Under the pieces are notes generated by a model. The model was not told where the DNA came from and made no database searches. It worked only from the letters and a program-made list of their open reading frames with translations. From positions 62,001 through 126,000 of IMG/VR virus record IMGVR_UViG_3300032307_000369: 64,000 bases of DNA; one strand, 5' to 3'. The position numbers were made by a program, and so were the translations under genes. Positions 5,172 through 43,518 of the stretch are shown in pieces (position 1 is the stretch's first letter; each line of letters begins with the position of its first letter).

Positions 5172-5785
5172 CACTGCCAGATGAAAGATATCGGGCTGTA
5201 GTACAGACTCAAAGATTTCTATTGCAAATATTGACTACCCCTCGGGTTCCAAAGGCAGTCAAGGATCAAGCTAGGTATTGTTTACGCCACTATCCTAATG
5301 AATGGGATATGCAACGTGCGGCTGAAGGCAGTCCAGATGTTTTTCAAAAAAACATGGATGACCTGCATAAATTTTTGTTAAAAGGTAAAGTAATGAAAGC
5401 AAACGAATTGTTTGAAAATATTGAACAACTGGCAACAGTTAGTGATGAGGCATTGGATAATGCATACCATTATGGACGTAGTACTCCTGGTGCAAACTTT
5501 GGCTGGCTTGCTAATATTGAAAGTGCCAAGGCTGCTTCTAAATTGATTAATGCTGGGGAGACAGACATTGAAGTAATTGCAGATGCAATTCATGATGGTT
5601 GGAATATCACTGCAATAGCAGACTATAAGGGTATGCTAAAATTAGACACACCAACCCCAGACGAAAAGAAAGCAAAACGTTTTGCATTGGCAAGTAAGAG
5701 CTATGCACAACTCCCAGAAGACGAAAAAGAAAAGGATAGAGTAGTAGCAAGGGCACTGCTTAATTTTATTAAAGGTGTAAAATGA
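5168..5785 (+). CDS. fusion: BPSL0761-like N-terminal domain + RyR-repeat-like domain (internal start 5393)
   Basis: MTLPDERYRAV..PRVPK..LRHYP; C-terminal A..H..W and Y..LPE.EKEKDR. Confidence 0.55.
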   Translation: MTLPDERYRAVVQTQRFLLQILTTPRVPKAVKDQARYCLRHYPNEWDMQRAAEGSPDVFQKNMDDLHKFLLKGKVMKANELFENIEQLATVSDEALDNAYHYGRSTPGANFGWLANIESAKAASKLINAGETDIEVIADAIHDGWNITAIADYKGMLKLDTPTPDEKKAKRFALASKSYAQLPEDEKEKDRVVARALLNFIKGVK

Positions 5786-6222
5786 AAATTGGTCTGAGTT
5801 ATAGTCGTTGCGTTCGAGATATCGTTGACGGCAAAGTTGACCTTGACGATGTTCTAGTTATTATTGCTCGCACAGATTTTGATCCACATGACGATGATCA
5901 GTGGAAGAGCATTTGGGTTGGCTATGGTGGAGGCACAGAAAACGCTTACACACGTGGCTTTTTCAGTCATAGTAATCCAGAGTGGGCTGGATATGATAAT
6001 GAAGAAATGTTTCGGTTGATTAGTACTGAACTTTGGGATCAAGGTAAATTACATCAACCTAGAAAATTTGGAGCACATGCAAGTCGCCGACCAGAAATTT
6101 GGCTAGAAGCAGTTCTGCCTAGTAGTGAGTTAGAAACTAATCCTGCGGCTAAAATGGCATGGGACAAGTTTCAAACTATTGCTGGGTTGACAAACGTTGA
6201 ACTGGACGACAAGTATAAATGA
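5782..6222 (+). CDS. hypothetical phage protein
   Basis: AAGGT SD, ATGA coupling. Confidence 0.65.
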   Translation: MKIGLSYSRCVRDIVDGKVDLDDVLVIIARTDFDPHDDDQWKSIWVGYGGGTENAYTRGFFSHSNPEWAGYDNEEMFRLISTELWDQGKLHQPRKFGAHASRRPEIWLEAVLPSSELETNPAAKMAWDKFQTIAGLTNVELDDKYK

Positions 6223-6638
6223 AAATTGGATTTACATGTAGCACGTTTGATTTGTTTCATGCAGGGCATGTAATTATGCTTGAAGAAGCAAAGAAGCAAT
6301 GTGACTTTTTAATAGTAGGTTTACAAACTGACCCAACCATTGATAGACCCAATACTAAAAACAAACCGGTACAAGGTGTGTTTGAACGTTGGACCCAATT
6401 AAAGGCTTGCAAGTTTGTAGATCAAATTGTTCCATACAGTAGTGAAAAGGAATTGCTAGACCTATTGCAATCTTTTCCTATTGATGTTAGAATAATAGGT
6501 GAGGAATACAAAGACAAATCTTTTACTGGTGATCATTTAGATATGGATTACCATTTTAATGAAAGACGACATAGTTTTAGTACAACAGAATTGCGCCAAC
6601 GTGTGGTTGATGCAGAAAATAAAAAGGAAATAAAATGA
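6219..6638 (+). CDS. cytidylyltransferase (TagD/HIGH family)
   Basis: [18 protein letters not shown]...K.VD, FSTTELR. Confidence 0.85.
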
Positions 6639-7255
6639 GTTTAGTCCCAATGGTAGTTGAAAAAAGTAATCAAGGTGAACGAGCCTATGACATTTATAGT
6701 CGATTACTCAAAGACCGTGTTATATTTTTGAACGGCGAAGTAGAAGATTACATGGCAAATGTAATTATTGCACAACTACTATTCTTAGAAAGTGAGAATA
6801 GTGATTTGGATATTCACTTGTACATCAATAGTCCAGGCGGTAGCGTGAGTGCCGGTCTTGCAATTTATGACACTATGCAGTTCATCAAACCAGATGTATG
6901 TACGTATGTCATGGGTCAAGCCTGTAGTATGGGCAGTTTCCTAGCACAAGCGGGTGCTCCTGGCAAACGAGTAGTACTTCCAGAATCACGCACAATGATT
7001 CACCGTGTGAGCTCAGGTACACGCGGTACAAGTGGTAGTATTCACGTACAAGACTTGCAATTTGAAGATGCTAAACGTAGTTTTGAAGAAGCACAACGTA
7101 TCAACAAACGTCTAACAGAATTGTATGTACGTCATAATACAGTGGGCAAAACATACGAAGAGCTATTTGAAACTATGAAGTTTGATACTTTCTTGAGTGC
7201 CGCTGAAGCTGTTGCCAATGGTCTTGCTGATCAAGTGATTGCAAAACGTCCTTGA
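6635..7255 (+). CDS. clpP: Clp protease proteolytic subunit
   Basis: [31 protein letters not shown] (Ser), MIH (His), FDTFL (Asp). Confidence 0.95.
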
Positions 7256-7291
7256 CCTATCTGGTACGCAAATAAATATGCGTACTAGAGG
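7256..7291 (+). promoter_or_regulatory. hairpin with TAAATA late-promoter motif in the loop; 3' arm covers the SD
   Basis: ctggtacgca-AATAAATA-tgcgtactag, extendable by cct/agg. Confidence 0.65.
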
Positions 7292-7296
7292 AAAAT

Positions 7297-8376
7297 ATGG
7301 CAGGTCCAGCGTTTAACAGCAATCAGCTAATCAAAAACATACGTCCAGACCAACTGGACATACGTAAAGGGGAACTATCCGGAGATTTAATTTCGGGTGG
7401 TTCCATTTCTACGTTTGCTTCTACTGGTATTAAAGATGAAGCAACAAAAATTTCTCTTGTTGTCAAAGACAATGAAATAATTGTTGACAACATCACTACC
7501 AAACAATTATCAGGAAATATCTTAGTTGAAGGTAACTTACAAGTATCTGGTCAAATAACTGCTGACCGTTTACACGTTTTGGAATTGACATCTGAAAGAA
7601 CCTATGATAAGATGTATTTGGAATTTCAACCAGTAGACACTGCGAGAAACCCAAATGGTAGTGGTCTTATTTGGAAGGGCACAGACTACACCAAACTGTT
7701 TGTATTAAAGACTGATAAATTTTTTAGTAGCGAACACATTGATCTACACGCTGATAAAAGTTTTAAAATTGACAATGTTGACGTACTAACAAAAAATACT
7801 TTAGGATCAACTATACGAAAAAGTAGTCTTAGAGAGATTGGAACATTGCACCATTTAACAGTGAGCGGTGACGTAAGTTTGGCTGACTTTGTAACTTTTA
7901 GCAGTGATCAACAAAGAATATCAATTAACGTTGAACAACCTGTAGGTACCATTACTATAGGTGATATTATGCAAGACGTTATTATGAACATAGATGTTGA
8001 TAATGGTCGTGCTAAGATTGGTACTTATAATAATAGACCATTTGATTTAACTGCTGGTGATCAAACATTAGTAACGTTAGATCCAAAAGGTATAGTCAGT
8101 GTTGGACATGAGTATAAAACAGATACTGAAATTCGTCTTTATGGCAAAGTAGGCATCAATGTAAAACATCCTGAAGCAGATTTAGATGTTAAGGGTAGTA
8201 TAAGATTTGGTAATAAACTTTTCATGGTATATAATTCTCCTCCAGAAAAAGGTAACTACAAAAGAGGGGACATCGTTTGGAACGAATCTCCTTCAGTTAA
8301 TTCACCTTTAGGCTGGGTATGTATAGTGTCAGGTTCGCCTGGCAAATGGGCATCATTTGGGGACATTCATGAATAG
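7297..8376 (+). CDS. putative virion/tail-fibre-associated beta-rich protein
   Basis: GKVGIN..PEADLDVKG repeat; C-terminal GDIVWN..GWVC..SG.PG.W as seen in tailspike/fibre termini; late motif upstream. Confidence 0.55.
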   Translation: MAGPAFNSNQLIKNIRPDQLDIRKGELSGDLISGGSISTFASTGIKDEATKISLVVKDNEIIVDNITTKQLSGNILVEGNLQVSGQITADRLHVLELTSERTYDKMYLEFQPVDTARNPNGSGLIWKGTDYTKLFVLKTDKFFSSEHIDLHADKSFKIDNVDVLTKNTLGSTIRKSSLREIGTLHHLTVSGDVSLADFVTFSSDQQRISINVEQPVGTITIGDIMQDVIMNIDVDNGRAKIGTYNNRPFDLTAGDQTLVTLDPKGIVSVGHEYKTDTEIRLYGKVGINVKHPEADLDVKGSIRFGNKLFMVYNSPPEKGNYKRGDIVWNESPSVNSPLGWVCIVSGSPGKWASFGDIHE

Positions 8377-8716
8377 GCATATTAAAACAGACAAAATTAA
8401 AAAACAAACTACTTATTGGCTTTGGTTTGGACGAGTAAGTCCAATACTATTTCTTATTGGATCTTTTTCATTATTTGAAATTTTCAACACCGAAGTACCA
8501 TTCATTTTCTATTCCAGTTGGATAGTTTTCGTTACAGTATCATTAATTTGGTGGGCATGGGTACTTAGGACCATTTTAGAGTTTATTAAATTTTTTCAAG
8601 AAGTCAGTCTCTCTGTTGAAGATATAAAAGACAATATAAAAGAAGTTCAACAGAGCGTAACAACTTTGAGAGATTTTGAGATAGAAATAAACAAAAAGAT
8701 TGACAATCCTAAATAA
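8369..8716 (+). CDS. 2-TM membrane protein with coiled-coil tail
   Basis: two hydrophobic helices. Confidence 0.6.
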   Translation: MNRHIKTDKIKKQTTYWLWFGRVSPILFLIGSFSLFEIFNTEVPFIFYSSWIVFVTVSLIWWAWVLRTILEFIKFFQEVSLSVEDIKDNIKEVQQSVTTLRDFEIEINKKIDNPK

Positions 8717-8727
8717 TAATGTATAAT
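8700..8727 (+). promoter_or_regulatory. sigma70-type promoter with nested TAAATA
   Basis: TTGACA-N16-TATAAT; TAAATA at 8710. Confidence 0.7.
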
Positions 8728-8731
8728 TAAT

Positions 8732-8777
8732 ACATGCGGCCTTAGGCATTCATCCCGCAATATAAATTCTGCATGTC
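8732..8777 (+). ncRNA. candidate structured cis-regulatory leader of queD
   Basis: GC-rich island; tgcgg/ccgca stem, loop ggcat pairs with atgtc after an A-rich linker. Confidence 0.4.
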
Positions 8778-8800
8778 ATTGTTCATAAAGGAAAACAACA

Positions 8801-9340
8801 ATGGCAAAATATCTTTCAACAAAAACATACGGCAATGATCGTGGACTTTCATGCTGTTTCAGACAGTGGCGTAGCACACATAGTCACTGCTCATTACTAC
8901 ACGGATATTCAATTGGTATTAAATTAATTTTTGAATCCGAGACACTAGATGATCGTAACTGGGTTATGGATTTTGGTGGACTAAAAGCATTCAAAGAGTG
9001 GAGCGAATACATGTTTGATCATACTTTGGTGCTTGGTGTTGATGATCCACATTTAGAAAAATTTAAAACACTTGCGGCACTTGGTCTTAATGATGTGGGC
9101 GGAGTTTGCGACATTCGTATCGTAGAAGCTGTAGGCTGTGAAAAATTTGCTGAATTGGCTTACAAAACTATGCAAGACATTTTGGAAACTTTCCAAAAGG
9201 GCGAAGGTTGGGAACTAAAAGACCAGTCTGGCAAAACATTAAAGTTGTTCGGTGCTCGTTATCCAGTTGGCGCAGGTGTTAAATTGCGTTCAGTAGAAGT
9301 TTTTGAACACGCCGGTAACAGTGCTGTTTATGAAGGATAA
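8801..9340 (+). CDS. queD: 6-carboxytetrahydropterin synthase / PTPS family
   Basis: HCSLLHGY, WVMDFGGLK, FDH, GCE, VEVFE. Confidence 0.85.
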   Translation: MAKYLSTKTYGNDRGLSCCFRQWRSTHSHCSLLHGYSIGIKLIFESETLDDRNWVMDFGGLKAFKEWSEYMFDHTLVLGVDDPHLEKFKTLAALGLNDVGGVCDIRIVEAVGCEKFAELAYKTMQDILETFQKGEGWELKDQSGKTLKLFGARYPVGAGVKLRSVEVFEHAGNSAVYEG

Positions 9341-9346
9341 ACTTTC

Positions 9347-9676
9347 ATGAAACATAGTATCTGCGACATTGGCGGTGTCGTAGTTAAGGATAACGAAACT
9401 TATGTCCTTAAAGACAACACCTTTCTTAAAAACTTAATTTTAAGTTCAACAGACTTAAAACCTAAACAAAGCACTCGCGGTCACAAACATCCTGGACAAG
9501 AAGAAGTTTATTATTTTGTCAACGGGAGCGGTATAATGGAATTAGACAACGAAAAGATACCAGTTTGTCCAGGGGACGTTATACTAATCAAAGATGGAGT
9601 ATTCCATAGAGTACATAACACAGAAGAAGAAAATCTTTATTTCGTTTGTGTATTTGACGGGAAGAGAAATCATTAA
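9347..9676 (+). CDS. cupin-domain protein
   Basis: HKH..QEEVY...G.G ... PGDVILI..GVFHRVHN. Confidence 0.85.
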   Translation: MKHSICDIGGVVVKDNETYVLKDNTFLKNLILSSTDLKPKQSTRGHKHPGQEEVYYFVNGSGIMELDNEKIPVCPGDVILIKDGVFHRVHNTEEENLYFVCVFDGKRNH

Positions 9677-9867
9677 TGAATTCTTTTGAAAAAATATGGG
9701 CCCGGGCAACTGGGCACTTAATGGGACAGACCGACGAAGATCGTCCAGATGTTCCTATACTCACACTACGAGAAGCAAGAACAGCGTTGTTTCTCAAAAC
9801 ATTTTGGGTAATCATTCATGTTGTAACCTGTTGCTTCATTATTGCTAATACTATCAGGCATTGGTGA
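9676..9867 (+). CDS. small membrane protein
   Basis: TAATG coupling; C-terminal TM. Confidence 0.6.
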   Translation: MNSFEKIWARATGHLMGQTDEDRPDVPILTLREARTALFLKTFWVIIHVVTCCFIIANTIRHW

Positions 9868-9876
9868 TTAATCCAG

Positions 9877-9905
9877 TTGACATTCAAGGGCATAGATGTT
9901 ATTAT
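9877..9905 (+). promoter_or_regulatory. sigma70-type promoter
   Basis: TTGACA-N17-TATTAT. Confidence 0.65.
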
Positions 9906-9933
9906 AACACTATGTCCTTTTTTATTGGTTATT

Positions 9934-10950
9934 ATGATTAAACGTATAGGTTTCGCATGTAAGTGGATTGATCGCCCTGATCAAGTAGATGGTATCAAGC
10001 CAACCGACGATTGTAAGCAATATAACACTGGCGCTACCACCATTACTTGGTTAAATAAACAAACAAAAGAAGTTGCTGAACAAAAACTATGGGACCTAAT
10101 GGTCCAAAACTTAGAAGCAACACGATTACTTGTTGAAAGGGTAGGCAAACAACATGAAAGACTCCGCATGGTTCGCCTTAGTAGCGACATTCTTCCTGCT
10201 TATACCCAATCTGATTGGAGTTATTTTTGGAGTAAACCTGACGTTGTTGAGTATCTTGAACGCAATTTCATCCTTATTGGTGATAGTGCTCGTGCAAGCA
10301 ATACCCGTGTTTCTATGCATCCTGGTCAGTTTACTGTTCTTGCTAGTGATAATCCGGACATTGTTCGGAGAAGTATAGAGGAGTTTGAATATCATGCAGA
10401 TATGGTCAGGTACATGGGCTACGGTAAACAATTTCAAGACTTTAAAATTAATGTCCACATCTCGGGTAGAGCCGGTCCCGAAGGTATTCGAGCTGCCTAC
10501 AAAAAACTTTCCCCTGAAGCAAGAAATTGCATCACAATTGAAAACGAGGAAATGAGCCATGGGTTATCTACTTGCTTGTCTCTTGGTGATCTTCTTCCTA
10601 TCGTACTTGATATACATCATCACTGGATTAAAGAAGGTGAATACATCATGCCAAATGACCCAAAAGTACAGCAAGTACTTGACAGTTGGCGTGGTCTTCG
10701 CCCTACTATGCACTATAGTATTAGCAGGGAAGATGTGCTTGTTGATCACTGCACTCTAACTAAACCCAATCACGAAGCTCTTTTAGAGTCCGGATACAAA
10801 AAACAAAAACTTAGGGCACACAGTAACTTCTATTGGAATAAGGAAGTTAATGATTGGGCATTGAGTTTTAATGATCAATTTGATATCATGTGCGAGAGCA
10901 AGGCTAAAAATTTAGCCAGCAAAGCTCTTTTTGATTATTCCAATACATGA
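9934..10950 (+). CDS. uvsE: UV damage endonuclease
   Basis: RIGFAC, RLSSD, SMHPGQF.VL.S, INVH, IENEE, LDIHHH, HYS, RAHS, MCESKAK. Confidence 0.92.
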   Translation: MIKRIGFACKWIDRPDQVDGIKPTDDCKQYNTGATTITWLNKQTKEVAEQKLWDLMVQNLEATRLLVERVGKQHERLRMVRLSSDILPAYTQSDWSYFWSKPDVVEYLERNFILIGDSARASNTRVSMHPGQFTVLASDNPDIVRRSIEEFEYHADMVRYMGYGKQFQDFKINVHISGRAGPEGIRAAYKKLSPEARNCITIENEEMSHGLSTCLSLGDLLPIVLDIHHHWIKEGEYIMPNDPKVQQVLDSWRGLRPTMHYSISREDVLVDHCTLTKPNHEALLESGYKKQKLRAHSNFYWNKEVNDWALSFNDQFDIMCESKAKNLASKALFDYSNT

Positions 10951-10972
10951 TCACGTGATTAAGCAATCACAC

Positions 10973-10998
10973 AAAAACCCGCACTAGGCGGGTTTTTT
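10973..10998. terminator. bidirectional intrinsic terminator
   Basis: aaaaacccgc-actag-gcgggtttttt between convergent genes. Confidence 0.9.
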
Positions 10999-11024
10999 GT
11001 TGCCAAGAAGATTATAACTGATAG

Positions 11025-11303
11025 TTACGAAGTCTTCTTAGGCGCCCTAGGTTTAGTACCAACTTTCTTTACAGCTGGTGCTTTTGCTGGGGCTTTTGGT
11101 TTTGGAGCTGCCTTAGGTTTTGCAGGTGCCTTAGCTTTAGCGGGAGCCTTTTTAGTTGCTGGCGCTTTTTTAGCTGGGACAATTGATTCAACCACAGCCT
11201 GAGTTGCTTGTTCTGCAACAGGTGCGGGTGTTTCAACTTTATAAGGAACTTCTGCTGTTACTGGCTTCTCTGAACCAAATAATGATTTTAGAAATTTAAT
11301 CAT
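11025..11303 (-). CDS. Ala/Lys/Pro-rich histone-H1-like protein
   Basis: AAGGAG SD; PAKKAPA repeats. Confidence 0.7.
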   Translation of the reverse strand: MIKFLKSLFGSEKPVTAEVPYKVETPAPVAEQATQAVVESIVPAKKAPATKKAPAKAKAPAKPKAAPKPKAPAKAPAVKKVGTKPRAPKKTS

Positions 11304-11396
11304 AATTTAATCTCCTTGTATTTTAATTATGCCTACAGATTGTTCGATAAATAAAATTGTGAAAGCATTGAAACAAAATATGCAGTTATAATACAG

Positions 11397-11425
11397 TTGA
11401 CTTAATGAGATATTGGTGCTACAAT
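11397..11425 (+). promoter_or_regulatory. sigma70-type promoter of the Fe-S operon
   Basis: TTGACT-N17-TACAAT with TGn extension. Confidence 0.7.
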
Positions 11426-11472
11426 AATGAATGTGGGCCACGAACTACAATAACAATAAGGTTCAATTAGTT

Positions 11473-12198
11473 ATGTTAAAAATTACAAATCTCTCCGTCA
11501 ATTACGACGTTATTCCAATTTTGGAAGATATCAATTTAGAAATCAACGAAGGCGAAATTCACGCTATTCTAGGACCAACAGGATCTGGAAAAAGTTCCTT
11601 GGCAAGTACAATAGCTGGTAAAACAGACCTCAGTGTTGTTAAAGGAAAAATAAACTTTAAAAGAAAATCTTTGAACAGTTTAAATCCAAATGAAAGAAGT
11701 AAGTTAGGAATTTTTACAACCTTTCAAGAACCTCCTGAAATTAATGGGATCACAAATTTAAATTTAACCAGACAAATTTTAAATGCTCGTAATGACAAAA
11801 GATCATCAACTGACATTATTAATGATTACAAAAGTTTAATAAAACAATTTGATCTAGGAAGCGAATGGTCCAATCGAGATTATAACGTAGGAGCAAGTGC
11901 AGGCGAAAAAAAGAAAAATGAAATTGTACAGTTACACATGCTCAATCCATCTCTTACAATTTTAGACGATATTGACAGTGGTTTAGACTTAGACACACTA
12001 ACCGAAGTATTTAAAAGTTTAAAAACTTTCCTATCACAAAAAGGAAAGGCAGCTATCATTATCACACATCAACCAACGATCCTTGAAGCAATCGAGCCCA
12101 CCCATGTGCATGTTATCATAGATGGAAGAATCGTAGAGTCAGGTGATAAGAAACTAATTAAAAGGATCATTTCAAATGGCTATCGAGAGTTTTCTTAA
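11473..12198 (+). CDS. sufC: SufC-like ABC ATPase (divergent)
   Basis: GEIHAILGPTGSGKSS, FQ.P.EI.G, S.GEKK.NEI.Q, ILDDIDSGLD, IITH. Confidence 0.85.
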   Translation: MLKITNLSVNYDVIPILEDINLEINEGEIHAILGPTGSGKSSLASTIAGKTDLSVVKGKINFKRKSLNSLNPNERSKLGIFTTFQEPPEINGITNLNLTRQILNARNDKRSSTDIINDYKSLIKQFDLGSEWSNRDYNVGASAGEKKKNEIVQLHMLNPSLTILDDIDSGLDLDTLTEVFKSLKTFLSQKGKAAIIITHQPTILEAIEPTHVHVIIDGRIVESGDKKLIKRIISNGYREFS

Positions 12199-13000
12199 AG
12201 TTGATTCACAAGACCCAGATTGGTCAAACAGTCCCACTCAGTACTTTGGTAAAAAATTTAAGGTCATTGATGCAAATTGCTTAATGATAAAAGAAAATAC
12301 TGATGACTTAATGGTTCTACGTATGAACCCAACTGAGTCAGATTTGCTGTGTAAAAATTTGCAAGTTCTTGGAAAAGATAGTAGTAGATTAGATTTGTTT
12401 ATTTTATGTGACGGATCTAAAAATACTCAACAGGTTTTTATTTACAATGTAACTGCTGAGCCAGATTCAATTATTAATATTGGAATTTTTGTTAAGGACG
12501 GAAAACTTAATAAGCATATTTTTGAATGTGAACTTTATGAGAATTCTGTTATTAACATTTTTGGTCTTGCAGAAAACGAAGTTGGTGGCAGTAGTGAAAT
12601 CATAAGCAAAGTTTACCATGCAGGTCCTTGTGCAGAGAGCAACACATTTGTAAACAGTATTGCTGGAAAAAATAGTCGAACTGTTTTTCAAGGCATTGTC
12701 AAAATTGAAGAAGACATGATAGACAGTGTTGCCAGTGTAACTAACACTAGTATTACATGTGATGAAACTGCCCAAGCATTTAGTACTCCGCAAATGATAA
12801 TTGATTGTGGACAAGTGAGAGCATATCATAACTGTGAAGTCAACACTGTTGACGAAAATAACATATGGTATTTAGAAAGCAGGGGAATTGATAGAAGTAG
12901 TGCTGAAACTCTATTAAAAACGTTGCATCAAGATAGTGTGTTGGACCTTGTTGAATATCAAGACATTAGAGATGAACTCAAAGATTTTTTCCAAAGTTAA
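12176..13000 (+). CDS. sufD: SufD/SufB-family beta-helix protein
   Basis: VFQG.VKI, S.PQM.I, AYH, WYLESRGI...A..L. Confidence 0.75.
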   Translation: MAIESFLKVDSQDPDWSNSPTQYFGKKFKVIDANCLMIKENTDDLMVLRMNPTESDLLCKNLQVLGKDSSRLDLFILCDGSKNTQQVFIYNVTAEPDSIINIGIFVKDGKLNKHIFECELYENSVINIFGLAENEVGGSSEIISKVYHAGPCAESNTFVNSIAGKNSRTVFQGIVKIEEDMIDSVASVTNTSITCDETAQAFSTPQMIIDCGQVRAYHNCEVNTVDENNIWYLESRGIDRSSAETLLKTLHQDSVLDLVEYQDIRDELKDFFQS

Positions 13001-14120
13001 AAGCGATTTTACTTTACCAGACAAAACATACTTAAACAGTGCATCACAAACTTTAATTCCTAATCAAGTAAAAAATTCCTACCTTGATATTTGTAATAAA
13101 ATTGATGCAAGGAAAGAGTATGAAAATGTTAGACAAAAAGTAAAACTACTAATTAATTCTAAAAAAGATAATGAAGTAGTTTTTACTCAAGGCAACAATC
13201 ATAGCATTAATATGATTGCCAAAAGTATTTGTCATAAATGGCATTCAAATGATTGTGTAATTGTTCCTGAAAGTGAGCATCATGCCAATTTACTCATTTG
13301 GCAATACATGTCAATTGAATACGGTTTTAGATTTGAAACTGTAAATGTTATCAAAGACGGCAGCATGGATCTTGGTCATCTTGAAGACTTGCTAGACAGT
13401 TGTGATGGTAAAATATTGTTCAGCATGAGTCACATATCCAACAGCATTGGATATGTACAGCCTGTTAAGAGTATTTTTGACAAGGTTAAAGAGTATGACG
13501 GAATAACTCTACTAGATGCAAGTTTGAGCATTGGTAGAGAATTGATAGATGTGCAAGAGTTTAATATTGATTTTCTAACATTTACTGGTCATAAATTTTA
13601 TGGTCCAACTGGTGTTGGTATATTATATGGCAAGCAAAAATATTTAGACAAGTTAGAGCCTACTATATTAGGCGACAGTAATAGCACATTATTACCATGG
13701 AAATTAGAAATTGGTAAACCTAATATTGCAAGTGTAGTTATGTTAGGTTCAGCAATTGATTGGTTTACATCATATGATTTAGAAAGTTTTCATACCTACG
13801 ATAAACTTATGAATGCAAATTTTCAAATGATGTTAAATGAATTAGACTTTGTAGAAATATTTCATCCTGGTTATTATAAGGGAGGATTAATTGGATTTAA
13901 TCTACATGGACACCATCCTGCGTATGTGGGTGAATTTTTGTCTAATGAAGGTATTGTATTAAAATATGGACATTTGAATGCAAGACCTATTGTAGAAGAA
14001 AAGTTCCCAAATGGTATACTTAGATTAAGTTGGGCCTGCTATAATACTAAAGAAGACGTTGAACAATTAAGGCAAGGACTTATAAAATTCTACGATAAAT
14101 ATAGTTCTAAAAGGACATAA
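12972..14120 (+). CDS. sufS: SufS-like class V PLP enzyme lacking the catalytic Cys
   Basis: EHHAN..WQ, HISN.IG, TGHKFYGPTGVG, R.S...YNT; GHLNA in place of GHHCA. Confidence 0.85.
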   Translation: MNSKIFSKVKSDFTLPDKTYLNSASQTLIPNQVKNSYLDICNKIDARKEYENVRQKVKLLINSKKDNEVVFTQGNNHSINMIAKSICHKWHSNDCVIVPESEHHANLLIWQYMSIEYGFRFETVNVIKDGSMDLGHLEDLLDSCDGKILFSMSHISNSIGYVQPVKSIFDKVKEYDGITLLDASLSIGRELIDVQEFNIDFLTFTGHKFYGPTGVGILYGKQKYLDKLEPTILGDSNSTLLPWKLEIGKPNIASVVMLGSAIDWFTSYDLESFHTYDKLMNANFQMMLNELDFVEIFHPGYYKGGLIGFNLHGHHPAYVGEFLSNEGIVLKYGHLNARPIVEEKFPNGILRLSWACYNTKEDVEQLRQGLIKFYDKYSSKRT

Positions 14121-14123
14121 AAT

Positions 14124-14513
14124 ATGGCTTATTCTTCACAAGTAATTGATCATTATGAAAACCCTAGAAACGTAGGTTCATTTGATAAAAATGATAATGA
14201 TGTTGGAACTGGTATGGTTGGAGCTCCTGCTTGTGGTGACGTTATGAAATTGCAAATTAAAGTTAATGAACAAGGTATTATTGAAGATGCAAAGTTTAAA
14301 ACTTATGGGTGTGGTAGTGCTATTGCTAGTTCTAGTCTTGTCACCGAGTGGCTCAAGGGCAAGAACTTGGATGAGGCACAAGCCATTAAGAACTCAGATA
14401 TCGCTACTGAACTTGCGTTACCGCCCGTTAAGATTCACTGTTCAATATTAGCAGAAGATGCTATCAAAGCCGCAGTAGCAGATTATAAAGCTAAACATGA
14501 TAACACTATCTGA
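14124..14513 (+). CDS. iscU: Fe-S scaffold protein
   Basis: [32 protein letters not shown]; all ligands intact. Confidence 0.97.
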
Positions 14514-14817
14514 ACAAGCTGCCAATAGGGTAAAAGCAACTCTAGAAAAGCGTGGTAAAGGACTAGGGATTAGATTAGGGGTCAAAACTACAGGTTGTAG
14601 TGGCATGGCCTATATGATAGAATTTGTAGATACTCCTACCACTGATGATATGAGCTTTGTTAGTTACGGAGTTCATGTGTTTGTAGATCCAAAAAGTTTA
14701 GCATACCTTGATGGTGTACAAGTGGAATGGGTTAAGAAAGGTCTTAATGAAGGCTTTGATTTTACCAATCCTAACGAACGTGATCGTTGTGGTTGCGGGG
14801 AAAGTTTTAGAGTTTAA
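14497..14817 (+). CDS. iscA: A-type Fe-S carrier
   Basis: [12 protein letters not shown]...CGCGESF. Confidence 0.95.
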
Positions 14818-15101
14818 ATCTTTCCAATTGGCAAAGTACTGCTAACTGGCATATCCCATATTTTTCTTTTAGTAATGCCCATTCGTTGGGCAAATTTTTT
14901 GACGTCACAATCACCACATACGTGGAAATATTTGTTGCTGAGTCTTTTGGGATCTATTTTAGCATGATCTCTTGTAAAATCCTTGTCGCAATTGTCACAG
15001 CGAAACACATTGATTGTTTTTGTTCTAGTATACTGGTGTTCTTTTCCCAGTTTACTGCTTCGAACATACTTGGAAATTTCTTTAAAAGATCTTATGAACA
15101 T
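14814..15101 (-). CDS. small Zn-ribbon protein
   Basis: CDNC...CGDC; TAAATA 5 nt before ATG. Confidence 0.7.
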
Positions 15102-15182
15102 GCCATTATTTACATTAAGTTTATAAAACTATAAGGTAAATAAAGTGGACAGTTGGTATATCACCCAAATTTGGAGTTAATA

Positions 15183-18100
15183 ATGGCAAGAAAAGACGTT
15201 AATATTGGTTTAACAGGTAACGATGGAACAGGTGACAGCATACGTGATGCGTTTTCCAAAGTTAATGCAAATTTCCAAGAACTTTACGCTAGTCAAGGTC
15301 TAGAGGCCGGACTAACATTTGATAACTTAGTTGACGTTATCAAACCACTTAGACCTAACACAGTTTTAGGCTTAGACAGCTTAGGAAAAACTATTGTTAG
15401 TAGAGATTTAGAAGCGGCTGTTGGTATTAGTATTGACACCGTCAGTGATCCGTCTAAGATAATCTTTAGTATTGCCAACGTTCAAATTAGACAAGACCCA
15501 ACACCAACACTGTCAAACGTACTAGATGGAAGTGGGTTCAAACTAAGTTTCATTGGTGATCCAGAAAATGACCAAGATGCTGTTACTAGAAAATGGGTAT
15601 ACCAAAATTTCTTAAACAGAGATAACATTGACAAGTTAGGTACATTTGACCTAGCCGCTGGCAGTGTCATGCGTCAAAATTTCAAGATCAGTCCAACTCC
15701 AGATAACGGCAATATTAATGCTGGTACAAAAATTATTAATGTTTTTGGTTCAGATGGCGTTACACCAAAAACTGATGTTCAGTTAAAGTTTCAAGCAACA
15801 CACCCTGCTCATGCAACTCGAAAAGATTATGTAGATACCAAGCTGTCATTACAAGGTACTGAGACATTAGATCCAGCAACTGGCTTTGTAAACAAAGGCA
15901 TGGGTGTGATGACAGGTCCATTGATTTTAAATGATCACCCTGGACAGTATGTTGAAATTGATAGGAAGCCAGATGGCACACTGTTCGTACAAGAAGATTA
16001 TAGAGCAGCCACAAGAGGGTATGTTGATTCCAAAACGTATTCTGCCGCAGGTAACATATTTGTCAGTACAAAAGGTAATGACGACATGTGGGATTTTGAC
16101 AACAATCGTCCAAATCCCATTTATGGATATCCTGAGGAAGAAATTGGACGTAGTTGGAGTAAAGCATTTAAATCAGTAAATGCCGCGTGTCGTTATGCAA
16201 CACGAATTATAGATGCTGTTGAATTACAAAATATTCCATATCAAGTTACTCCACAACAAATTTCACGTTGGGCTCCTCCATTTACAACGCCAATTACAAG
16301 TCCAAGAACTCGTGTGCGTGTTAGCTTACAAAATCACGGATTCAAAGATGGAGACTACGTTTTAGTTAGCGGAGCTATCTTAGGATCTTTAGACACAAGA
16401 AATTTAAACGGTATTCACAGAGTTAATGCGTTAGATGTTAACAATTTTGAATTAAATTTAAAATCACTGGTAACATGGCCAAATCCAGAAGTTGCACCTG
16501 GCGGCACTATTAGTATTTCGTTGGCTAATAAAAAGGACGGTCCTTACAGTGAAATTTCTAAGGTTGACTTTGGCTTTAGAGGATTCTTTGTACCAAAACC
16601 TGAAATTACTATTATGGTTGAATCAGGAGTTTACTTTGAAGAAGCTCCTATGTTTGTTCCACCAAACTGTGCTATTAAGGGCGATGAATTTAGACGTACT
16701 TTAATTAAACCAAAGCCAGGACCAGTTAATCCTGATAATCAGCTTACTAAATTTGTTCGTGGTGATAGAAGTCAAAGTGCTACCTTTTGGTATAACTCAC
16801 ACTACTACAATCAATTGTCAAGATCAGTTGGAACCACTAACGTGGTTGGTAGTACAAAATTAGAAATTAAAAATAGTCCTTATAGACCAAAGAGTGGTAT
16901 GCGATTTATTGTGGGTACTCTTGGTGGTATACCAAACGTATATCGAGTTGGACGTGAAGTTAACATTGTTTACAAAGAACCAAATCCAGATTTAAATATT
17001 GCTCCTGGAACATATATCATGGACATCGTTGATGACAACGGTGATCCAAAACCATTGGCAACTGGTATTCCAGATTCAACAACTATAGAATTCTTGTTAG
17101 ACCACGAACACTGTGATGCCATGCTTGTTGCTGATGCATTCCAGTTGCGTAATATAACAGTTATAGGATTTAAGGGCTTTGCTATGGCCTTTGATCCTAA
17201 GAGACAAATTAAAACACGTTCTCCTTATGCTCAAGTTGGCGCTGTATTTGCTGGAGAAGGTGGTGGTGGTCAGTTGGTTGACGGTATGTCTGGTAACCAA
17301 GTATGTTATGTATTAGACACTAGTTATACTGATCCGTTTACTGGAACACAAGGTTCTAGTGGACTTAAAATGACTGTTACTGGATTAGTACGTACTCCTG
17401 AAACTCCAAATACATTTTTCTTGGCTAAGAAAAAATATGTCATTATCGATTCCACAACTCCAGATTCCAACGGTACTGCTACATTAACTTTAAGTACTAC
17501 AACTCCAATTGAAGTTGATGATACTTATTTGCCTGCAGGTTTTATTCCAAACGGTTCTCAAATTTTAATTGAAACTGCTGGTAACCGATCAATGTTGTCT
17601 AACGACTTTACCATGATTAACGATTTAGGTTATGGTCTTGTGTGTGAAAATAACGGTGTTGCAGAAGCAGTTAGTCAATTTACATACTATTGCCGTGCCA
17701 GCTATTTGTCTAGATCAGGTGGACAAATTCGTTCGGTAACAGGATCAAGTTGCTATGGTATTATTGGTTTACAATCTGAAGGTAGCGATCCTAACGAAGC
17801 TATTCAGATTGGTAGAATTAAAACTGACATTGGTAACATCATGCAGGTTTACATTGATGATCCTAGTGCAGATGGCAACCAAGGTGCCGTAAGTTTGGTA
17901 ATGGGAGGTTTGGCAAGTAAGCCTATAAGAAACTCTACATTCAAATTAACCAAACACGAAATCATTATTAAAAATATTGCTCGAGCAAGATTGAGTGGTG
18001 GTACACTAACAACTGGGCCGCTAGTTGTAACAACATATTATCCTCATCCTTTCTCAACTGGAGAGAGTGTACAAATGACCAGTGTGAGAGGATTGCAATT

Positions 18101-21100
18101 GCCTGCAATTCCTCCAAGTACTACCCCAAGAGCAACTGATGTTGATGGAAGAGTTTATACTATTACTTCTGTTAACAGTCACACGTTTACATTAGATGGA
18201 AGTGAAAGCACTAATTATATAAATGATTTAGGAACTTATAATTTTGCTGACTTACCAGCTCGTGCTATATCTAATCTAGTAATTGGAGCACAAGATGTTG
18301 TGTTTTCAATTAAGGGAGATCCTAGTCCATCTAATATTACAGGTAGAGCTAGATTTGATGGCATTCCAGGCGAAAACCAAGCTGGACAAAATGTATTAAA
18401 ACTTCAACGACTACAGCGTCCAGCTGTTGTTGGAATGAAAACAACTATTCCTGGCGGAGTGTTGACCTACACTGTAACTGATGTTACTGAAAAAGTAGTT
18501 ACATTTAAACCATCTCCAAGACCAGCACCTACTGGTGACAATGATAATAAAATTGGTGCACAAACCATTTATATCTACACCACTACAGATATAACTACAG
18601 GTGCTATTAATGGCACAACACTTACTGCTACTAATTTAGATCAAAATAATGTTGGACAATTAGTCACAGGAGCCACTGTAGCTGACAACACATACATTAT
18701 AGCAGTGACCAGTCCTACAACAGCGACTGTGTCAATAAGTCAAACTGTTACTAACAGAACTTTAGAATTAAGTTGGGTTCCTAAAATAGGCTGGAGTTTC
18801 CAGCATTTAGACACCAACATGGGTCTACAGTTAAATTATACTAGATATACAATTACTGATACTCCAGTATATGATGCTGTATCAAATAGATGGGCTGTTA
18901 CCTTAGATGTTCCGCTAACAGTCAATATGCAAAATCAAGAAGCAACTGGTCAAACGACTATTGTTGACGGAATTTGGGACGTTACTTTAAACTATGATTT
19001 AGAAACAAGCATCGCTAACAGTGTAAACCCAGTATCATTTACGTTTGTTGATTCGTATTGGGTTACAAGCATTGATCCGTCATTGACCAACCCAATACCT
19101 ACTGTTACTGATGAATACAATAGAGTACGTGCTCGTAAGATTAATTTATATCAGCAAAAGACAATTAGTGTAAGTCAAATTTTAAACAGACCTGCTATTA
19201 TTAACAGCTCTGCTTTAAGATTCTCATCTTCAAACTATGATCCAAGTATATATCGTATTTTAGGTAAAACTTCTGATGGCGGTATTACACAAGATAGATA
19301 TGCTGTTACTACTACTATAAATCCACTTAGTGGTCTTAATACGAATGCTGTAGAGAAAGTATTAGCAAACAAAACTTGGATACAGTCTGAAGTTATTAAT
19401 TACTTGGCTACAATTTATCCTAATTTCCAATACAATGTTAACACTTGTTATCGTGACGTTGGATATATTATCGATGCAGTACTTTATGACTTAACTTACG
19501 GCGGTAACGTAAGAAGCCGTGCCGCTGGTATTAGTTATTACCAACAAGGTAATCCAAGTGCGGCTCTTGTATTAAGTCAGCAAAAAGTAGAAACAATTGA
19601 TGCAATTAATTTTGCGACCACTGCGGCAATAACTGCCTTAAATCAATATAGTGGCGCAACAGTACCTCAATTACAACTACCATATCGTGGAAGTAATTTA
19701 AACGGTGTTGCACAATTACAGGCAAATAAACTGTTTATACAAGATGAAGTTATTGCATTCTTAGCACAAACATATCCTACTTTACAGTTCAATCAAACTA
19801 CTTGTCGTAGAGACGTTGGATTGATTATTGATGCTGTTGCATACGATTTAGAGTATGGTGGTAACGTGGCAACTAGAACGGCTGCTCTAGCATACTATGA
19901 TGGATCAACAAGCTCACAGTATGTGTTGTCTAATCAAAAAACCCAAACCATTGCTGCCATTAACAGAGCATCTACAGTTGCTCAACAAATTGTTTTAGAA
20001 ACTGCTGTAACTGCGACTGCTGGCAACACTGCAACACAAAATACTGCTGGTACTCCTGGAGTTGCTGGTGTTGATGACGTAAGAGTTCAAACATTAATGA
20101 ACATTATTACTAATGTTCTACAAAATGGTACTTCTGTTGCTCCAACTAGAAATTTAGGAATTAGAAGAAGTTATCAAGATCCTCTAGGTGTAGAGTATGC
20201 CCCACAAAGTATTGACAGTGGCATTGTAGCAGAAGCCGGTGCTGCCACAGCATTGCAAGCTCTAATGGACCAAATTGTAGCCATAATTGAATTTGGCACT
20301 ACAGGCCCGCATGTTGTTGTACAGCCACAAGTGTTAGATACTTTACAGGCAATTGATTTCCCACCAACTGCAACATCATTACAATATGGCGCAGTATTAA
20401 CTGGTCCTGGAATTCCTAAAGCAGGAGTTAACGGCGTTACCGAAGATACATTTATTAGAACAGTGACTCAATTGTTTGATGAAAATCAAAATACAATTGG
20501 CTACAGAGCTAGAATTAGTGCGCCAGTAACACAAGCAATTCCTGCTGGTACAGAAATTGTTATTACTGGTCCTGGTAGTGACTTCTTATTTGATCTAAAC
20601 ACTCCACTAGACCTTAGACACTTAGCAGGCGATGTAATTGGTATCACTACCACATTCTCAACTGTACGTGCAACTGGTCATGATTTCTTAAACGTTGGGG
20701 CAGGTGGATATGATGACTCTAACTATCCTAATAACGTTTATGGTCAACCAGTTAATACGCCATCTGACAGTGCAATTGCTAAAGAGGTTGGGACTGGTCG
20801 TGTGTTCCACGTGTCAACTGATCAAAATGGTAATTTTAGAGTAGGTAGCTTCTTTAACGTTAACCAAGGTGACGGATCTGTTAGTATTAGTGCTAAAATT
20901 GGTTTAAGTGCTGTTACAAGTTTAAGTTTCTTAACTGGTGCAACCGTTAACCAATTCTCAACTGATTCTAAGTTAGACGACAATAGTGACAACATTGTTT
21001 CTACACAAAAGGCAATGAAGACCTACATCAATAACTTGATTGACGGTCGTTTTACAATTGACAATACTGATACTCCACAACGTGGTCTATTAAGACTTGA

Positions 21101-43005: not shown

Positions 43006-43518
43006 ATGGAAAAACTTGTATTTCATCCAGATCCAATTTTAGAAGAACAAATGCCAGCATTTGATTTTGACAATCCTATTATGGATCCTAAAGAATTAGA
43101 AAAAGAACTATTAGCAATTATGTTTGCCAACAATGGCATTGGTCTTGCAAGTCCACAGATTGGCATAAGAACTAGAGTATTTGCAATGGGGCATTCACTT
43201 ATGCCAGAAGCAAGTCTTGCAATGTTTAACCCAACTGTAATTGATGCTAGCAATGAATTTCAAGATATAGAAGAAGGATGTTTGAGTTTTCCAAATATTT
43301 TTGCTAAAATTAAAAGACCTACTTGGATTGTAGTAAAATACAATACTAGTGATAATGAAGAACGAACAGAACGAATGGAGGGTTACAACTGTAAATGTTT
43401 TTTACATGAATTGGACCACTTAGATGGTATTGTAATGAAAGATCGTTTAAGTCAACTTAAATGGGCACTAGCCGTTAAAAAATCAAAAAAGGTAAAAAAT
43501 TATGTTAGAACCAAATGA
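43006..43518 (+). CDS. def: peptide deformylase
   Basis: GIGLASPQ, EGCLS, HELDH. Confidence 0.95.
   Translation: MEKLVFHPDPILEEQMPAFDFDNPIMDPKELEKELLAIMFANNGIGLASPQIGIRTRVFAMGHSLMPEASLAMFNPTVIDASNEFQDIEEGCLSFPNIFAKIKRPTWIVVKYNTSDNEERTERMEGYNCKCFLHELDHLDGIVMKDRLSQLKWALAVKKSKKVKNYVRTK

What the first reader, a model, noticed from the sequence alone, without database searches (positions are those of the whole stretch)
11397..14817. Chimeric phage Fe-S operon: divergent sufC-D-S without sufB, joined to intact iscU-iscA
Seen: five coupled genes behind a sigma70 promoter, with only one SufB/D-family gene. IscU and IscA keep all ligands and the LPPVK chaperone motif and look host-like, with a visibly GC-richer patch near 14340-14440. 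They also have their own TAAATA motif at 14096. Established: SUF and ISC are normally separate systems and SufB is the SUF scaffold. Inference: the phage may block host SUF and reroute clusters through its own IscU/IscA to phage Fe-S enzymes such as a QueE-type radical SAM protein, which is not seen in this window.
Basis: partly seen in the sequence, partly recalled or inferred. Interest (0 to 1): 0.65.

Follow-up and report, generated by a model that had tools for sequence, protein, structure and literature searches.

The report
Decayed phage SUF operon plus IscU-IscA
A large freshwater phage carries the remains of a once-complete iron-sulfur (SUF) operon, with sufB gone and a SufS that has lost its catalytic cysteine yet is still conserved, joined to an intact IscU-IscA pair. 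It is therefore not a working hybrid SUF pathway but a conserved "dead-enzyme" module next to a host-dependent scaffold and carrier.

Summary
The five genes are real: sufC 11470-12198, sufD 12176-13000, sufS-like 12972-14120, iscU 14124-14513 and iscA 14497-14817. They overlap or nearly abut. The 245.5-kb viral contig holds only one SufB/D-family gene.

- The catalytic Cys is Asn.
- The loop carrying R56 and the type-II beta-hairpin are deleted.
- Three further active-site residues are changed.
- The SufC catalytic Glu is Asp.

Related phage contigs show how this arose. Four of them carry a canonical sufB-C-D-S-E-T-A operon in the same slot. Eight Cys-less contexts, in six sequence-distinct lineages, lack sufB and sufE, with or without iscU-iscA. 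Some relatives have also lost the PLP lysine, SufD His360 and the SufC H-loop.

These genes are still under strong purifying selection (dN/dS 0.02-0.09). The loss happened at least twice.

IscU and IscA keep every ligand. The phage copies form one clade, and their codon composition matches the phage, so this was a single old capture.

Five radical-SAM genes lie elsewhere on the contig. No desulfurase, SufE or ferredoxin was found.

Best reading: IscU and IscA work with host IscS to feed phage Fe-S enzymes. The SufC-SufD-SufS remnant has a non-catalytic role that is still unknown. Whether it blocks host SUF is untested.

The parts
11025..11303 (-). Ala/Lys/Pro-rich 92-aa gene. It marks the upstream flank of the operon slot in all relatives.
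   Evidence: It has no Pfam hit.
11346..11353 (+). GATAAATA motif, similar to a T4 late promoter, in the shared upstream region.
   Evidence: The columns are invariant in the alignment with the sufB-upstream regions of L014 and L015. Enrichment of the motif upstream of ORF starts is shown.
11397..11425 (+). Sigma-70-like promoter TTGACT-17-TACAAT with an extended-10 TG.
   Evidence: 10 of 12 matches. It is conserved in L012, and its -35 box is conserved upstream of sufB in L014 and L015. As a consensus match alone it is not significant.
11470..12198 (+). sufC (242 aa). Walker A, Q-loop and H-loop are kept. The Walker-B catalytic Glu is Asp (ILDDID, nt 11959-11988) and the signature reads SAGE instead of SGGE.
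12176..13000 (+). Short sufD-like gene (274 aa), the only SufB/D-family gene on the contig. The equivalent of E. coli SufD His360 is kept (H218, nt 12827-12829).
12972..14120 (+). sufS-derived pseudo-desulfurase (382 aa). It has the type-II SufS fold. The PLP Lys (K208), the D200 equivalent and the R379 equivalent are kept. The catalytic Cys, the alpha3-alpha4 loop (H55/R56) and the beta-hairpin are lost. Q203 is Leu, T278 is Lys and R359 is Lys.
13977..13979 (+). AAT (Asn336) at the position of the catalytic Cys (E. coli C364). This is two base changes away from any Cys codon.
   Evidence: The same Asn is found in 8 cluster representatives, P0001-P0008.
14095..14101 (+). ATAAATA motif 22 nt upstream of the iscU start, inside the 3' end of the sufS-like gene. 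It is a likely internal late-type promoter.
   Evidence: It is conserved in L012, L096 and L097.
14124..14513 (+). iscU (129 aa). C37, D39, C63, H105, C106 and LPPVK are all present.
14497..14817 (+). iscA, an A-type carrier (106 aa), with C34, C98 and C100.
14876..14892 (+). Weak terminator-like hairpin after iscA.
   Evidence: Three such sites were found against 2.2 expected, so this is weak.
14814..15101 (-). Cys-rich 95-aa gene. It marks the downstream flank of the slot in most relatives, ahead of the giant fibre gene.

Best explanation
The locus is a reduced descendant of a complete phage sufB-C-D-S-E-T-A operon. sufB, sufE, sufT and sufA have been lost. An iscU-iscA pair, captured once and long ago from a proteobacterium, now occupies the downstream part of the slot.

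Shown: the sufS-derived protein cannot make a persulfide. It has no catalytic Cys, no R56 loop and no beta-hairpin. No other desulfurase or sulfur acceptor is on the contig, so the locus cannot act as a SUF pathway.

Inferred: IscU and IscA are functional. They draw sulfur from the host IscS and use host HscBA and Fdx. This raises scaffold and carrier capacity for the phage's own radical-SAM enzymes.

Inferred from selection, with the nature of the role unknown: SufC, SufD and the dead SufS are kept as a non-catalytic or only weakly catalytic module. It most likely binds or modulates something rather than assembling clusters.
For: 1. Gene identities and intact IscU and IscA ligands.
2. SufS lesions. 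Cys364 is Asn when aligned to solved SufS structures. A 13-aa deletion removes the HRGIH loop and a 9-aa deletion removes the hairpin. Q203 is Leu, T278 is Lys and R359 is Lys. Published work shows that R56, R359, the alpha3-alpha4 loop and the beta-latch are needed for catalysis and persulfide transfer (PMC11507941; PMC8918507). The fold is nonetheless intact: pLDDT 93.8 and TM 0.92 to E. coli SufS.
3. Comparative series. Four of 4 contexts with canonical SufS carry sufB, sufE, sufT and sufA (L014, L015, L101, L102). None of 8 Cys-less contexts carries sufB or sufE in the sequence available (L013 and L104 are cut close to sufC); these are the window with its near-relatives L008-L012, L013, L103, L100, L104, L096, L097 and L098.
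4. The region upstream of sufC is homologous to the region upstream of sufB in relatives.
5. Catalytic residues of SufC and His360 of SufD decay further in relatives. SufB C254, C405 and E434 and SufD H360 are essential in E. coli (PMC5571166).
6. Purifying selection. dN/dS is 0.05-0.06 between the window and L012, and 0.02-0.09 within the most degenerate lineages.
7. The contig holds no second class-V aminotransferase, no SufE and no Fer2.
8. Five radical-SAM genes lie on the same contig and are conserved in the 93% relative.
9. Phage IscU plus IscA form one clade with SH-aLRT 99.5.
Against: - No expression or biochemical data exist; no RNA run holds the locus.
- In the window itself the decay is mild. 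The PLP Lys, the D200 and R379 equivalents, SufD His360, and the SufC Walker A and H-loop are all kept. Some chemistry could therefore survive: a Cys-independent PLP reaction or slow ATP hydrolysis.
- The contig is estimated about 70% complete, so a sufB, a desulfurase or a sufE could lie in the unseen part.
- The host is unknown.
- That IscU draws on host IscS is assumed from how ISC works in bacteria.
- The role of the SufC-SufD-SufS remnant is not identified.
Confidence: 0.55

Rival explanations
1. Dominant-negative or decoy module. Catalytically impaired SufC and SufD enter host SufB-containing complexes, and the dead SufS interferes with host sulfur mobilisation. Host SUF is shut down, and iron and sulfur flow through host IscS to phage IscU and IscA.
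For: Catalytic residues are lost while folds, lengths and binding regions are kept under strong purifying selection. The same reduction arose at least twice: an AU test on SufC+SufD rejects a single sufB-less clade, p = 0.001. The strongly conserved SufD C-terminal region, which binds SufC in solved complexes, is kept.
Against: The SufS elements that dock SufE, the beta-hairpin and the alpha3-alpha4 loop, are deleted, so titration of SufE is unlikely. Phage SufS is at most 36% identical to any bacterial SufS, which makes heterodimers doubtful. The host, and whether it has SUF, is unknown. No benefit of blocking SUF has been demonstrated.
Confidence: 0.17
2. Working hybrid pathway using different chemistry. 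The Cys-less SufS homologue is still a PLP enzyme, for example a cystine C-S lyase that releases cysteine persulfide, and it passes sulfur to IscU. SufC-SufD supplies iron or ATP-driven remodelling, and IscA distributes the clusters.
For: The window protein keeps the PLP Lys, the His-His pair, and the D200 and R379 equivalents. The last two are invariant across all 40 aligned homologues. SufD His360, SufC Walker A and the SufC H-loop are kept in the window. iscU directly follows the sufS-like gene in three lineages. Inactive archaeal IscS paired with IscU is a precedent for an unusual desulfurase-scaffold pair (PMC8918507).
Against: Relatives with the same gene order have lost the PLP Lys, the His pair, SufD His360, and the SufC catalytic Glu and H-loop, yet remain under purifying selection. 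Relatives L013, L103 and L100 keep sufC-D-S without any iscU or iscA. The phosphate-binding Thr-Thr is Asn-Asn and Q203 is Leu in the window protein.
Confidence: 0.15
3. Non-functional relics. sufC, sufD and the sufS-like gene are decaying remnants that have simply not been deleted yet. Only iscU-iscA matters.
For: Progressive loss of catalytic residues across lineages. The sufS-like gene has unusually low GC.
Against: There are no frameshifts or stops in 12 contexts. SufD is 274-276 aa in all of them. dN/dS is 0.02-0.09 in three separate lineage pairs with dS of 0.3-1.5. The three genes are retained together even where iscU-iscA is absent.
Confidence: 0.05

Closest known systems
Proteobacterial or cyanobacterial-type SUF operon (sufBCDSE with sufA and sufT), as in E. 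coli SufBC2D-SufSE
   Same: SufC, SufD and SufS are homologues in the same order. Sister phages carry the complete set in the same genomic slot.
   Different: There is no SufB, SufE, SufT or SufA. SufS lacks the catalytic Cys, the R56 loop and the beta-hairpin. The SufC catalytic Glu is Asp. SufD is short, 274 aa against 423 aa in E. coli.
Phage-encoded IscU and A-type carrier auxiliary genes in marine T4-like viral genomes (Nishimura et al. 2017, PMC5332604), and the lone IscU in Phage C48C1 (OQ984149)
   Same: A T4-like phage carrying IscU and an A-type carrier together with several radical-SAM genes and ClpP. C48C1 IscU is 75.6% identical.
   Different: Here the pair is fused to a conserved, catalytically dead SufC-SufD-SufS remnant. 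No searched paper that turned up describes such a remnant.
Gram-positive sufCDSUB operon
   Same: The order of the first four genes looks the same: C-D-S followed by a U-type protein.
   Different: The resemblance is convergent. The ancestor was sufBCDSE. The U-type protein is a true IscU, with LPPVK and His105, above the TIGR01999 cut-off and below the SufU cut-off. There is no sufB.
Archaeoglobus fulgidus IscS, an inactive desulfurase paralogue that pairs with IscU (PMC8918507)
   Same: A desulfurase homologue without desulfurase activity, encoded next to iscU.
   Different: Af-IscS is type I. It lacks the PLP Lys but keeps the Cys that may ligate the cluster. The window protein is type II, keeps the Lys and lacks the Cys.
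SMS / minimal SUF (SmsCB) systems
   Same: A two-component core of an ABC ATPase plus one SufB/D-family protein.
   Different: In SMS the partner is SufB-like and holds the cluster. Here the partner is SufD-like, derived by loss of SufB, and in relatives it loses even the His360 ligand.

Membership tests
SUF pathway (SufBC2D scaffold + SufSE) | SufB scaffold subunit present | tested here: not met
   There is one SufB/D-core gene in the 245.5-kb contig, and it is SufD-like. The same holds for the 214-kb relative. About 30% of the genome is unseen.
SUF pathway (SufBC2D scaffold + SufSE) | SufS catalytic cysteine on the active-site loop | tested here: not met
   GHLNARP aligns to GHHCAQP of solved SufS. 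The Asn codon is at 13977-13979.
SUF pathway (SufBC2D scaffold + SufSE) | SufS alpha3-alpha4 loop (H55/R56) and type-II beta-hairpin | tested here: not met
   There are deletions of 13 aa and 9 aa relative to the canonical phage homologues.
SUF pathway (SufBC2D scaffold + SufSE) | PLP-binding lysine of SufS | tested here: met
   GHKFYGPTG, K208. It is lost in relatives P0009, P0010, P0027 and P0030-33.
SUF pathway (SufBC2D scaffold + SufSE) | Sulfur acceptor SufE or SufU | tested here: not met
   No PF02657 hit on the contig. The U-type protein scores below the SufU cut-off, 66 bits against 92.5.
SUF pathway (SufBC2D scaffold + SufSE) | SufC ATPase motifs intact | tested here: inconclusive
   Walker A, Q-loop and H-loop are present. 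The catalytic Glu is Asp and the signature SGGE reads SAGE. Activity cannot be judged from sequence.
SUF pathway (SufBC2D scaffold + SufSE) | SufD His360 ligand | tested here: met
   H218 aligns to E. coli H360. It is replaced by Gln in 5 of 8 sufB-less relatives.
ISC system | IscU with three Cys, Asp39, His105 and the LPPVK chaperone motif | tested here: met
ISC system | IscA with its three conserved Cys | tested here: met
   C34, C98 and C100. TIGR02011 scores above its cut-off.
ISC system | Type-I desulfurase IscS encoded alongside | tested here: not met
   The only class-V aminotransferase on the contig is the dead SufS homologue. A host IscS is assumed.
ISC system | HscB, HscA and ferredoxin encoded alongside | tested here: inconclusive
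   There is no Fer2 on the contig. HscB and HscA were not searched.
Gram-positive sufCDSUB | SufU-type zinc sulfurtransferase, and sufB at the operon end | tested here: not met
   The protein is IscU-type, not SufU-type, and there is no sufB.
Cys-independent NifS-like C-S lyase (C-DES type) | PLP enzyme lacking the active-site Cys but releasing persulfide from cystine | not testable with these tools
   The Lys and the D200 and R379 equivalents are kept in the window. Relatives lose the Lys. An enzyme assay is needed.

The most novel reading that the evidence does not exclude
A family of large freshwater T4-like phages has repeatedly converted a working SUF machine into a conserved three-protein pseudoenzyme module: ATPase-impaired SufC, SufD without its ligand, and SufS without Cys or Lys. 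This module acts on the host's Fe-S biogenesis, as a decoy, inhibitor or re-router, rather than assembling clusters itself. That would be a new kind of phage takeover of cofactor assembly.
Probability: 0.2. Interest if true: 0.8.

Novelty: new variant of a known kind. Interest (0 to 1): 0.62.

Why it matters
Phage-borne IscU and A-type carriers are known auxiliary genes. Complete phage SUF operons are rarer.

A SUF remnant that has lost its catalytic residues, yet is kept under strong purifying selection, arises more than once and sits beside intact IscU and IscA was not found in the literature searched. It gives a natural series: full operon, then Cys-less SufS, then Lys-less SufS together with an H-loop-less SufC. 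This series can be used to ask two questions:
- What do SufC, SufD and SufS do apart from catalysis?
- How does a phage tune Fe-S supply for its own radical-SAM enzymes?

It is also a warning for automated annotation of auxiliary genes. These genes would be called 'cysteine desulfurase' and 'Fe-S assembly ATPase' although the first certainly is not a desulfurase and the second may not be an active ATPase.

Tried and rejected
- Megablast of the locus against deposited phage genomes found no match. tblastn with SufD found only bacterial-like contamination records and one remote Microcystis phage hit.
- A link to the freshwater amoC-phages that carry sufB (bioRxiv 10.64898/2026.06.18.733297) was rejected. 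There is no AmoC on the contig.
- QueE or NrdG as the client enzyme was not supported. The five radical-SAM proteins match no QueE or NrdG model above its cut-off. They look like SPASM or B12-type enzymes.
- Independent capture of iscU-iscA in the window and in L012 was suggested by IscA being only 64% identical and by saturated dS. It was rejected in favour of one capture followed by fast evolution or cassette exchange, because the phage copies form one clade.
- A recent host origin inferred from the GC-rich patch was rejected on GC3.
- Host inference from IscU failed: it is 83-90% identical to many beta- and gammaproteobacteria. Inference from the relatives' SufB also failed: it is about 70-72% identical to many phyla. 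There is no usable signal, so the host is left open.
- Complex prediction of SufC + SufD + the dead SufS gave no verdict, with a score of 0.00 and controls not run. This is evidence neither for nor against binding.
- A search for RNA sequencing runs found none holding the locus. Holders are freshwater, lake and subsurface DNA metagenomes.
- Two literature searches, one for phage SUF auxiliary genes and one for SufS lacking its catalytic cysteine, returned nothing relevant to phages.
Full report
WHAT IS THERE

The window is bases 62,001-126,000 of a 245,550-bp linear viral contig from IMG/VR. The contig is estimated about 70% complete and has 37.5% GC. Its other genes point to a large T4-like phage: family-B DNA polymerase, clamp loader, a Lon-like protease, ClpP, giant fibre proteins, and gp9/10-like baseplate hits in relatives. 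Sequencing runs that hold the locus come from freshwater, lake and subsurface metagenomes.

They match SufC, a SufB/D-core protein closest to SufD, a SufS-family class-V aminotransferase, IscU and IscA. Comparison with relatives puts the sufC start at 11470 and the sufS start at 12972. The genes overlap by 23, 29 and 17 nt, or are separated by 3 nt.

A sigma-70-like site lies at 11397-11425 (TTGACT-17-TACAAT, preceded by TG). It is not significant as a bare pattern match, but it is conserved.

That motif is more than 20-fold enriched just upstream of ORF starts in this genome. It is conserved upstream of iscU in relatives that otherwise differ greatly at the nucleotide level. iscU-iscA therefore probably has its own late-type promoter.

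THE SufS HOMOLOGUE IS NOT A DESULFURASE

Against solved SufS structures, the active-site loop GHHCAQP reads GHLNARP in the window protein. The Asn codon AAT at 13977-13979 is two changes away from any Cys codon.

Alignment with phage homologues shows further changes:
- A 13-residue deletion removes the HRGIH segment, which is the alpha3-alpha4 loop carrying H55 and R56.
- A 9-residue deletion removes the type-II beta-hairpin.
- Q203 is Leu, T278 is Lys, R359 is Lys, and the phosphate-binding Thr-Thr is Asn-Asn.

Published work on E. coli SufS shows that C364 carries the persulfide. R56 and R359 are needed for catalysis and transfer. The alpha3-alpha4 loop and the beta-latch mediate the close approach of SufE (PMC11507941; PMC8918507).

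The PLP lysine, the His-His pair, and the equivalents of D200 and R379 remain. The predicted structure is confident (pLDDT 93.8) and superposes on E. coli SufS at TM 0.92. It is a well-folded SufS without the chemistry of one.

In SufC, the Walker-B catalytic Glu is Asp and the signature reads SAGE. Walker A, the Q-loop and the H-loop are intact. SufD keeps the equivalent of His360.

WHERE IT CAME FROM

Eight IMG/VR contigs and further metagenomic contigs carry the same slot. It lies between an Ala/Lys/Pro-rich small gene and a Cys-rich 95-aa gene, followed by a giant fibre gene.

Four contexts carry a full sufB-sufC-sufD-sufS-sufE-sufT(DUF59)-sufA operon: L014, L015, L101 and L102. Their SufS is canonical in every motif, and their SufB has the C405 and E434 motifs.

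Eight Cys-less contexts, in six sequence-distinct lineages, lack sufB and sufE in the sequence available; L013 and L104 are cut close to sufC, so sufB upstream of them cannot be excluded:
- The window with L008-L012: sufC-D-S followed by iscU-iscA.
- L096 and L097: the same order, with a SufS that has also lost the PLP Lys. L098 is a shorter contig with the same SufS.
- L104: the same order, with Cys replaced by Asp and the Lys lost.
- L013 and L103: sufC-D-S only.
- L100: sufC-D-S only, with Cys replaced by Ser and the hairpin still present.

The correlation between a canonical SufS and the presence of sufB and sufE has no exception in these contexts.

The intergenic region upstream of sufC in the window aligns with the region upstream of sufB in L014 and L015, including the -35 box. 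sufB was therefore cut out cleanly.

In the sufB-less lineages, SufC loses the signature motif, the catalytic Glu and the H-loop His to varying degrees. SufD loses the His360 equivalent in five of eight.

These genes are not decaying neutrally:
- SufD is 274-276 aa in all twelve contexts.
- No frame is broken.
- dN/dS is 0.05-0.06 between the window and L012.
- dN/dS is 0.02-0.09 within the most degenerate pairs, at dS of 0.3-1.5.

A tree of SufC+SufD+SufS puts L100 inside the clade of full-operon phages. An AU test on SufC+SufD rejects a single sufB-less group (p = 0.001; p = 0.05 when SufS is included). Two caveats apply: the branches of L100 and L101 are long, and the tree had been seen before the test was run. 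With those caveats, the reduction happened at least twice.

THE ISC HALF

IscU is 83-90% identical to IscU of many beta- and gammaproteobacteria. IscA is 62-67% identical to betaproteobacterial IscA, but only 27-28% identical to the SufA of the full-operon phages. The carrier is therefore a replacement, not a descendant.

Phage IscU plus IscA (window, L012, L096, L097) form one clade with SH-aLRT 99.5. The nearest bacteria are 78% identical. GC3 of iscU and iscA equals that of their neighbours. This was a single old capture, not a fresh host-like patch.

Between the window and L012, the pair is much more diverged than its flanks. dS is saturated for iscU and 1.9 for iscA, against 0.3-0.8 for the flanks. 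This points to fast evolution on the L012 branch or to exchange of the cassette among phages.

CLIENTS AND MISSING PARTNERS

The contig has no second class-V aminotransferase, no SufE, no Fer2 ferredoxin and no AmoC.

It does have five radical-SAM genes clustered at genome positions 5-16 kb, outside the window. At least two have SPASM domains and one has a B12-binding domain. They sit with a cupin, a 2OG-oxygenase-like protein and a dehydrogenase. The cluster is conserved in the 93% relative. None is a QueE. The PTPS/QueD-like gene at 8801-9340 scores below the QueD cut-off.

Marine T4-like viral genomes with IscU or A-type carriers plus many radical-SAM genes and ClpP have been described (PMC5332604).

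HOW IT MOST LIKELY WORKS

Shown: the locus cannot mobilise sulfur by the SUF route, and it lacks the SUF scaffold.

Inferred:
- IscU and IscA are functional and depend on host IscS and the host chaperones. They add scaffold and carrier capacity for phage Fe-S enzymes.
- SufC, SufD and the dead SufS are kept for a role that needs neither catalysis nor SufB or SufE. This follows from their selection pattern and from their retention in phages without iscU-iscA.

I cannot say what that role is. Three candidates remain:
It is weakened by the loss of the SufE-docking elements.
- A residual Cys-independent PLP chemistry feeding IscU. This is possible in the window but contradicted by the Lys-less relatives.
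- Mere relics, which the selection data contradict.

A complex prediction for the three proteins gave no verdict and is not used as evidence.

NOVELTY AND VERDICT

The chimeric origin is supported. The proposed blocking mechanism is untested.

The main new point is a conserved, recurrently evolved, catalytically disabled SufC-SufD-SufS module in a clade of large freshwater phages. I rate this a new variant of a known kind, phage Fe-S auxiliary genes, with moderate to high interest.

Only genetic code 11 was used.

Noticed in passing
Genome (G000) 5,176-17,271, minus strand, outside the window; loci L003-L007: A cluster of five radical-SAM genes, at least two with SPASM domains and one with a B12-binding domain. 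It also holds a cupin, a 2OG-Fe(II)-oxygenase-like protein, an alcohol-dehydrogenase-like protein and two paralogous ~380-aa unknowns. It looks like a small-molecule or peptide modification pathway and is conserved in the 93% relative.
   Followed up: partly
Whole genome, for example window 7273, 23730, 37270, 46465, 49968, 56577, 62156: ATAAATA lies 3-45 nt upstream of ORF starts far more often than chance: 18 of 27 plus-strand copies fall in a zone that covers 3.2% of the genome. This looks like a T4-type late promoter. TAAATA overall is under-represented, with 50 copies found against 95 expected.
   Followed up: partly
window 11025-11303 (-): A 92-aa protein made largely of Ala/Lys/Pro repeats, with a histone-H1-like composition. 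It is conserved (77% identity in L009-L012, present in L015) and diverges from the operon promoter. It has no family hit.
   Followed up: no
window 14814-15101 (-): A 95-aa protein with two CxxC pairs, conserved in most relatives between the Fe-S operon and the giant fibre gene. It is missing in L101 and L102, where sufA abuts the fibre gene. Its only match is a faint SprT-like hit.
   Followed up: no
window 15153-23717 (+): A giant fibre-like ORF of 2,854 aa. Its length varies among relatives up to 3,394 aa, and an internal stretch of about 73 residues is missing in L009.
   Followed up: no
window 6635-7255, 8801-9340, 9347-9676, 9877-10950; L101 3141-3725: The neighbourhood upstream of the operon is stress-themed. 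It holds ClpP, a PTPS/QueD-like protein below the QueD cut-off, a small cupin and the UV-damage endonuclease UvdE. One full-operon relative also has an Fe/Mn superoxide dismutase next to sufB.
   Followed up: partly
L104 2827-2943: A 38-aa ORF is inserted between the dead sufS and iscU in one lineage only.
   Followed up: no
L014 3430-3741: An extra 103-aa ORF lies between sufB and sufC in one full-operon relative. It is absent in L015.
   Followed up: no
window 43502-45784 and 437-1315: A 760-aa ATP-dependent (Lon-like) protease with a very strong PHROG match, and an SPFH/Band-7 protein. With ClpP, and a ClpX-like ORF seen only by eye (not scanned) at genome position 25.2 kb, the phage carries an unusually full set of proteolysis genes.
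   Followed up: no
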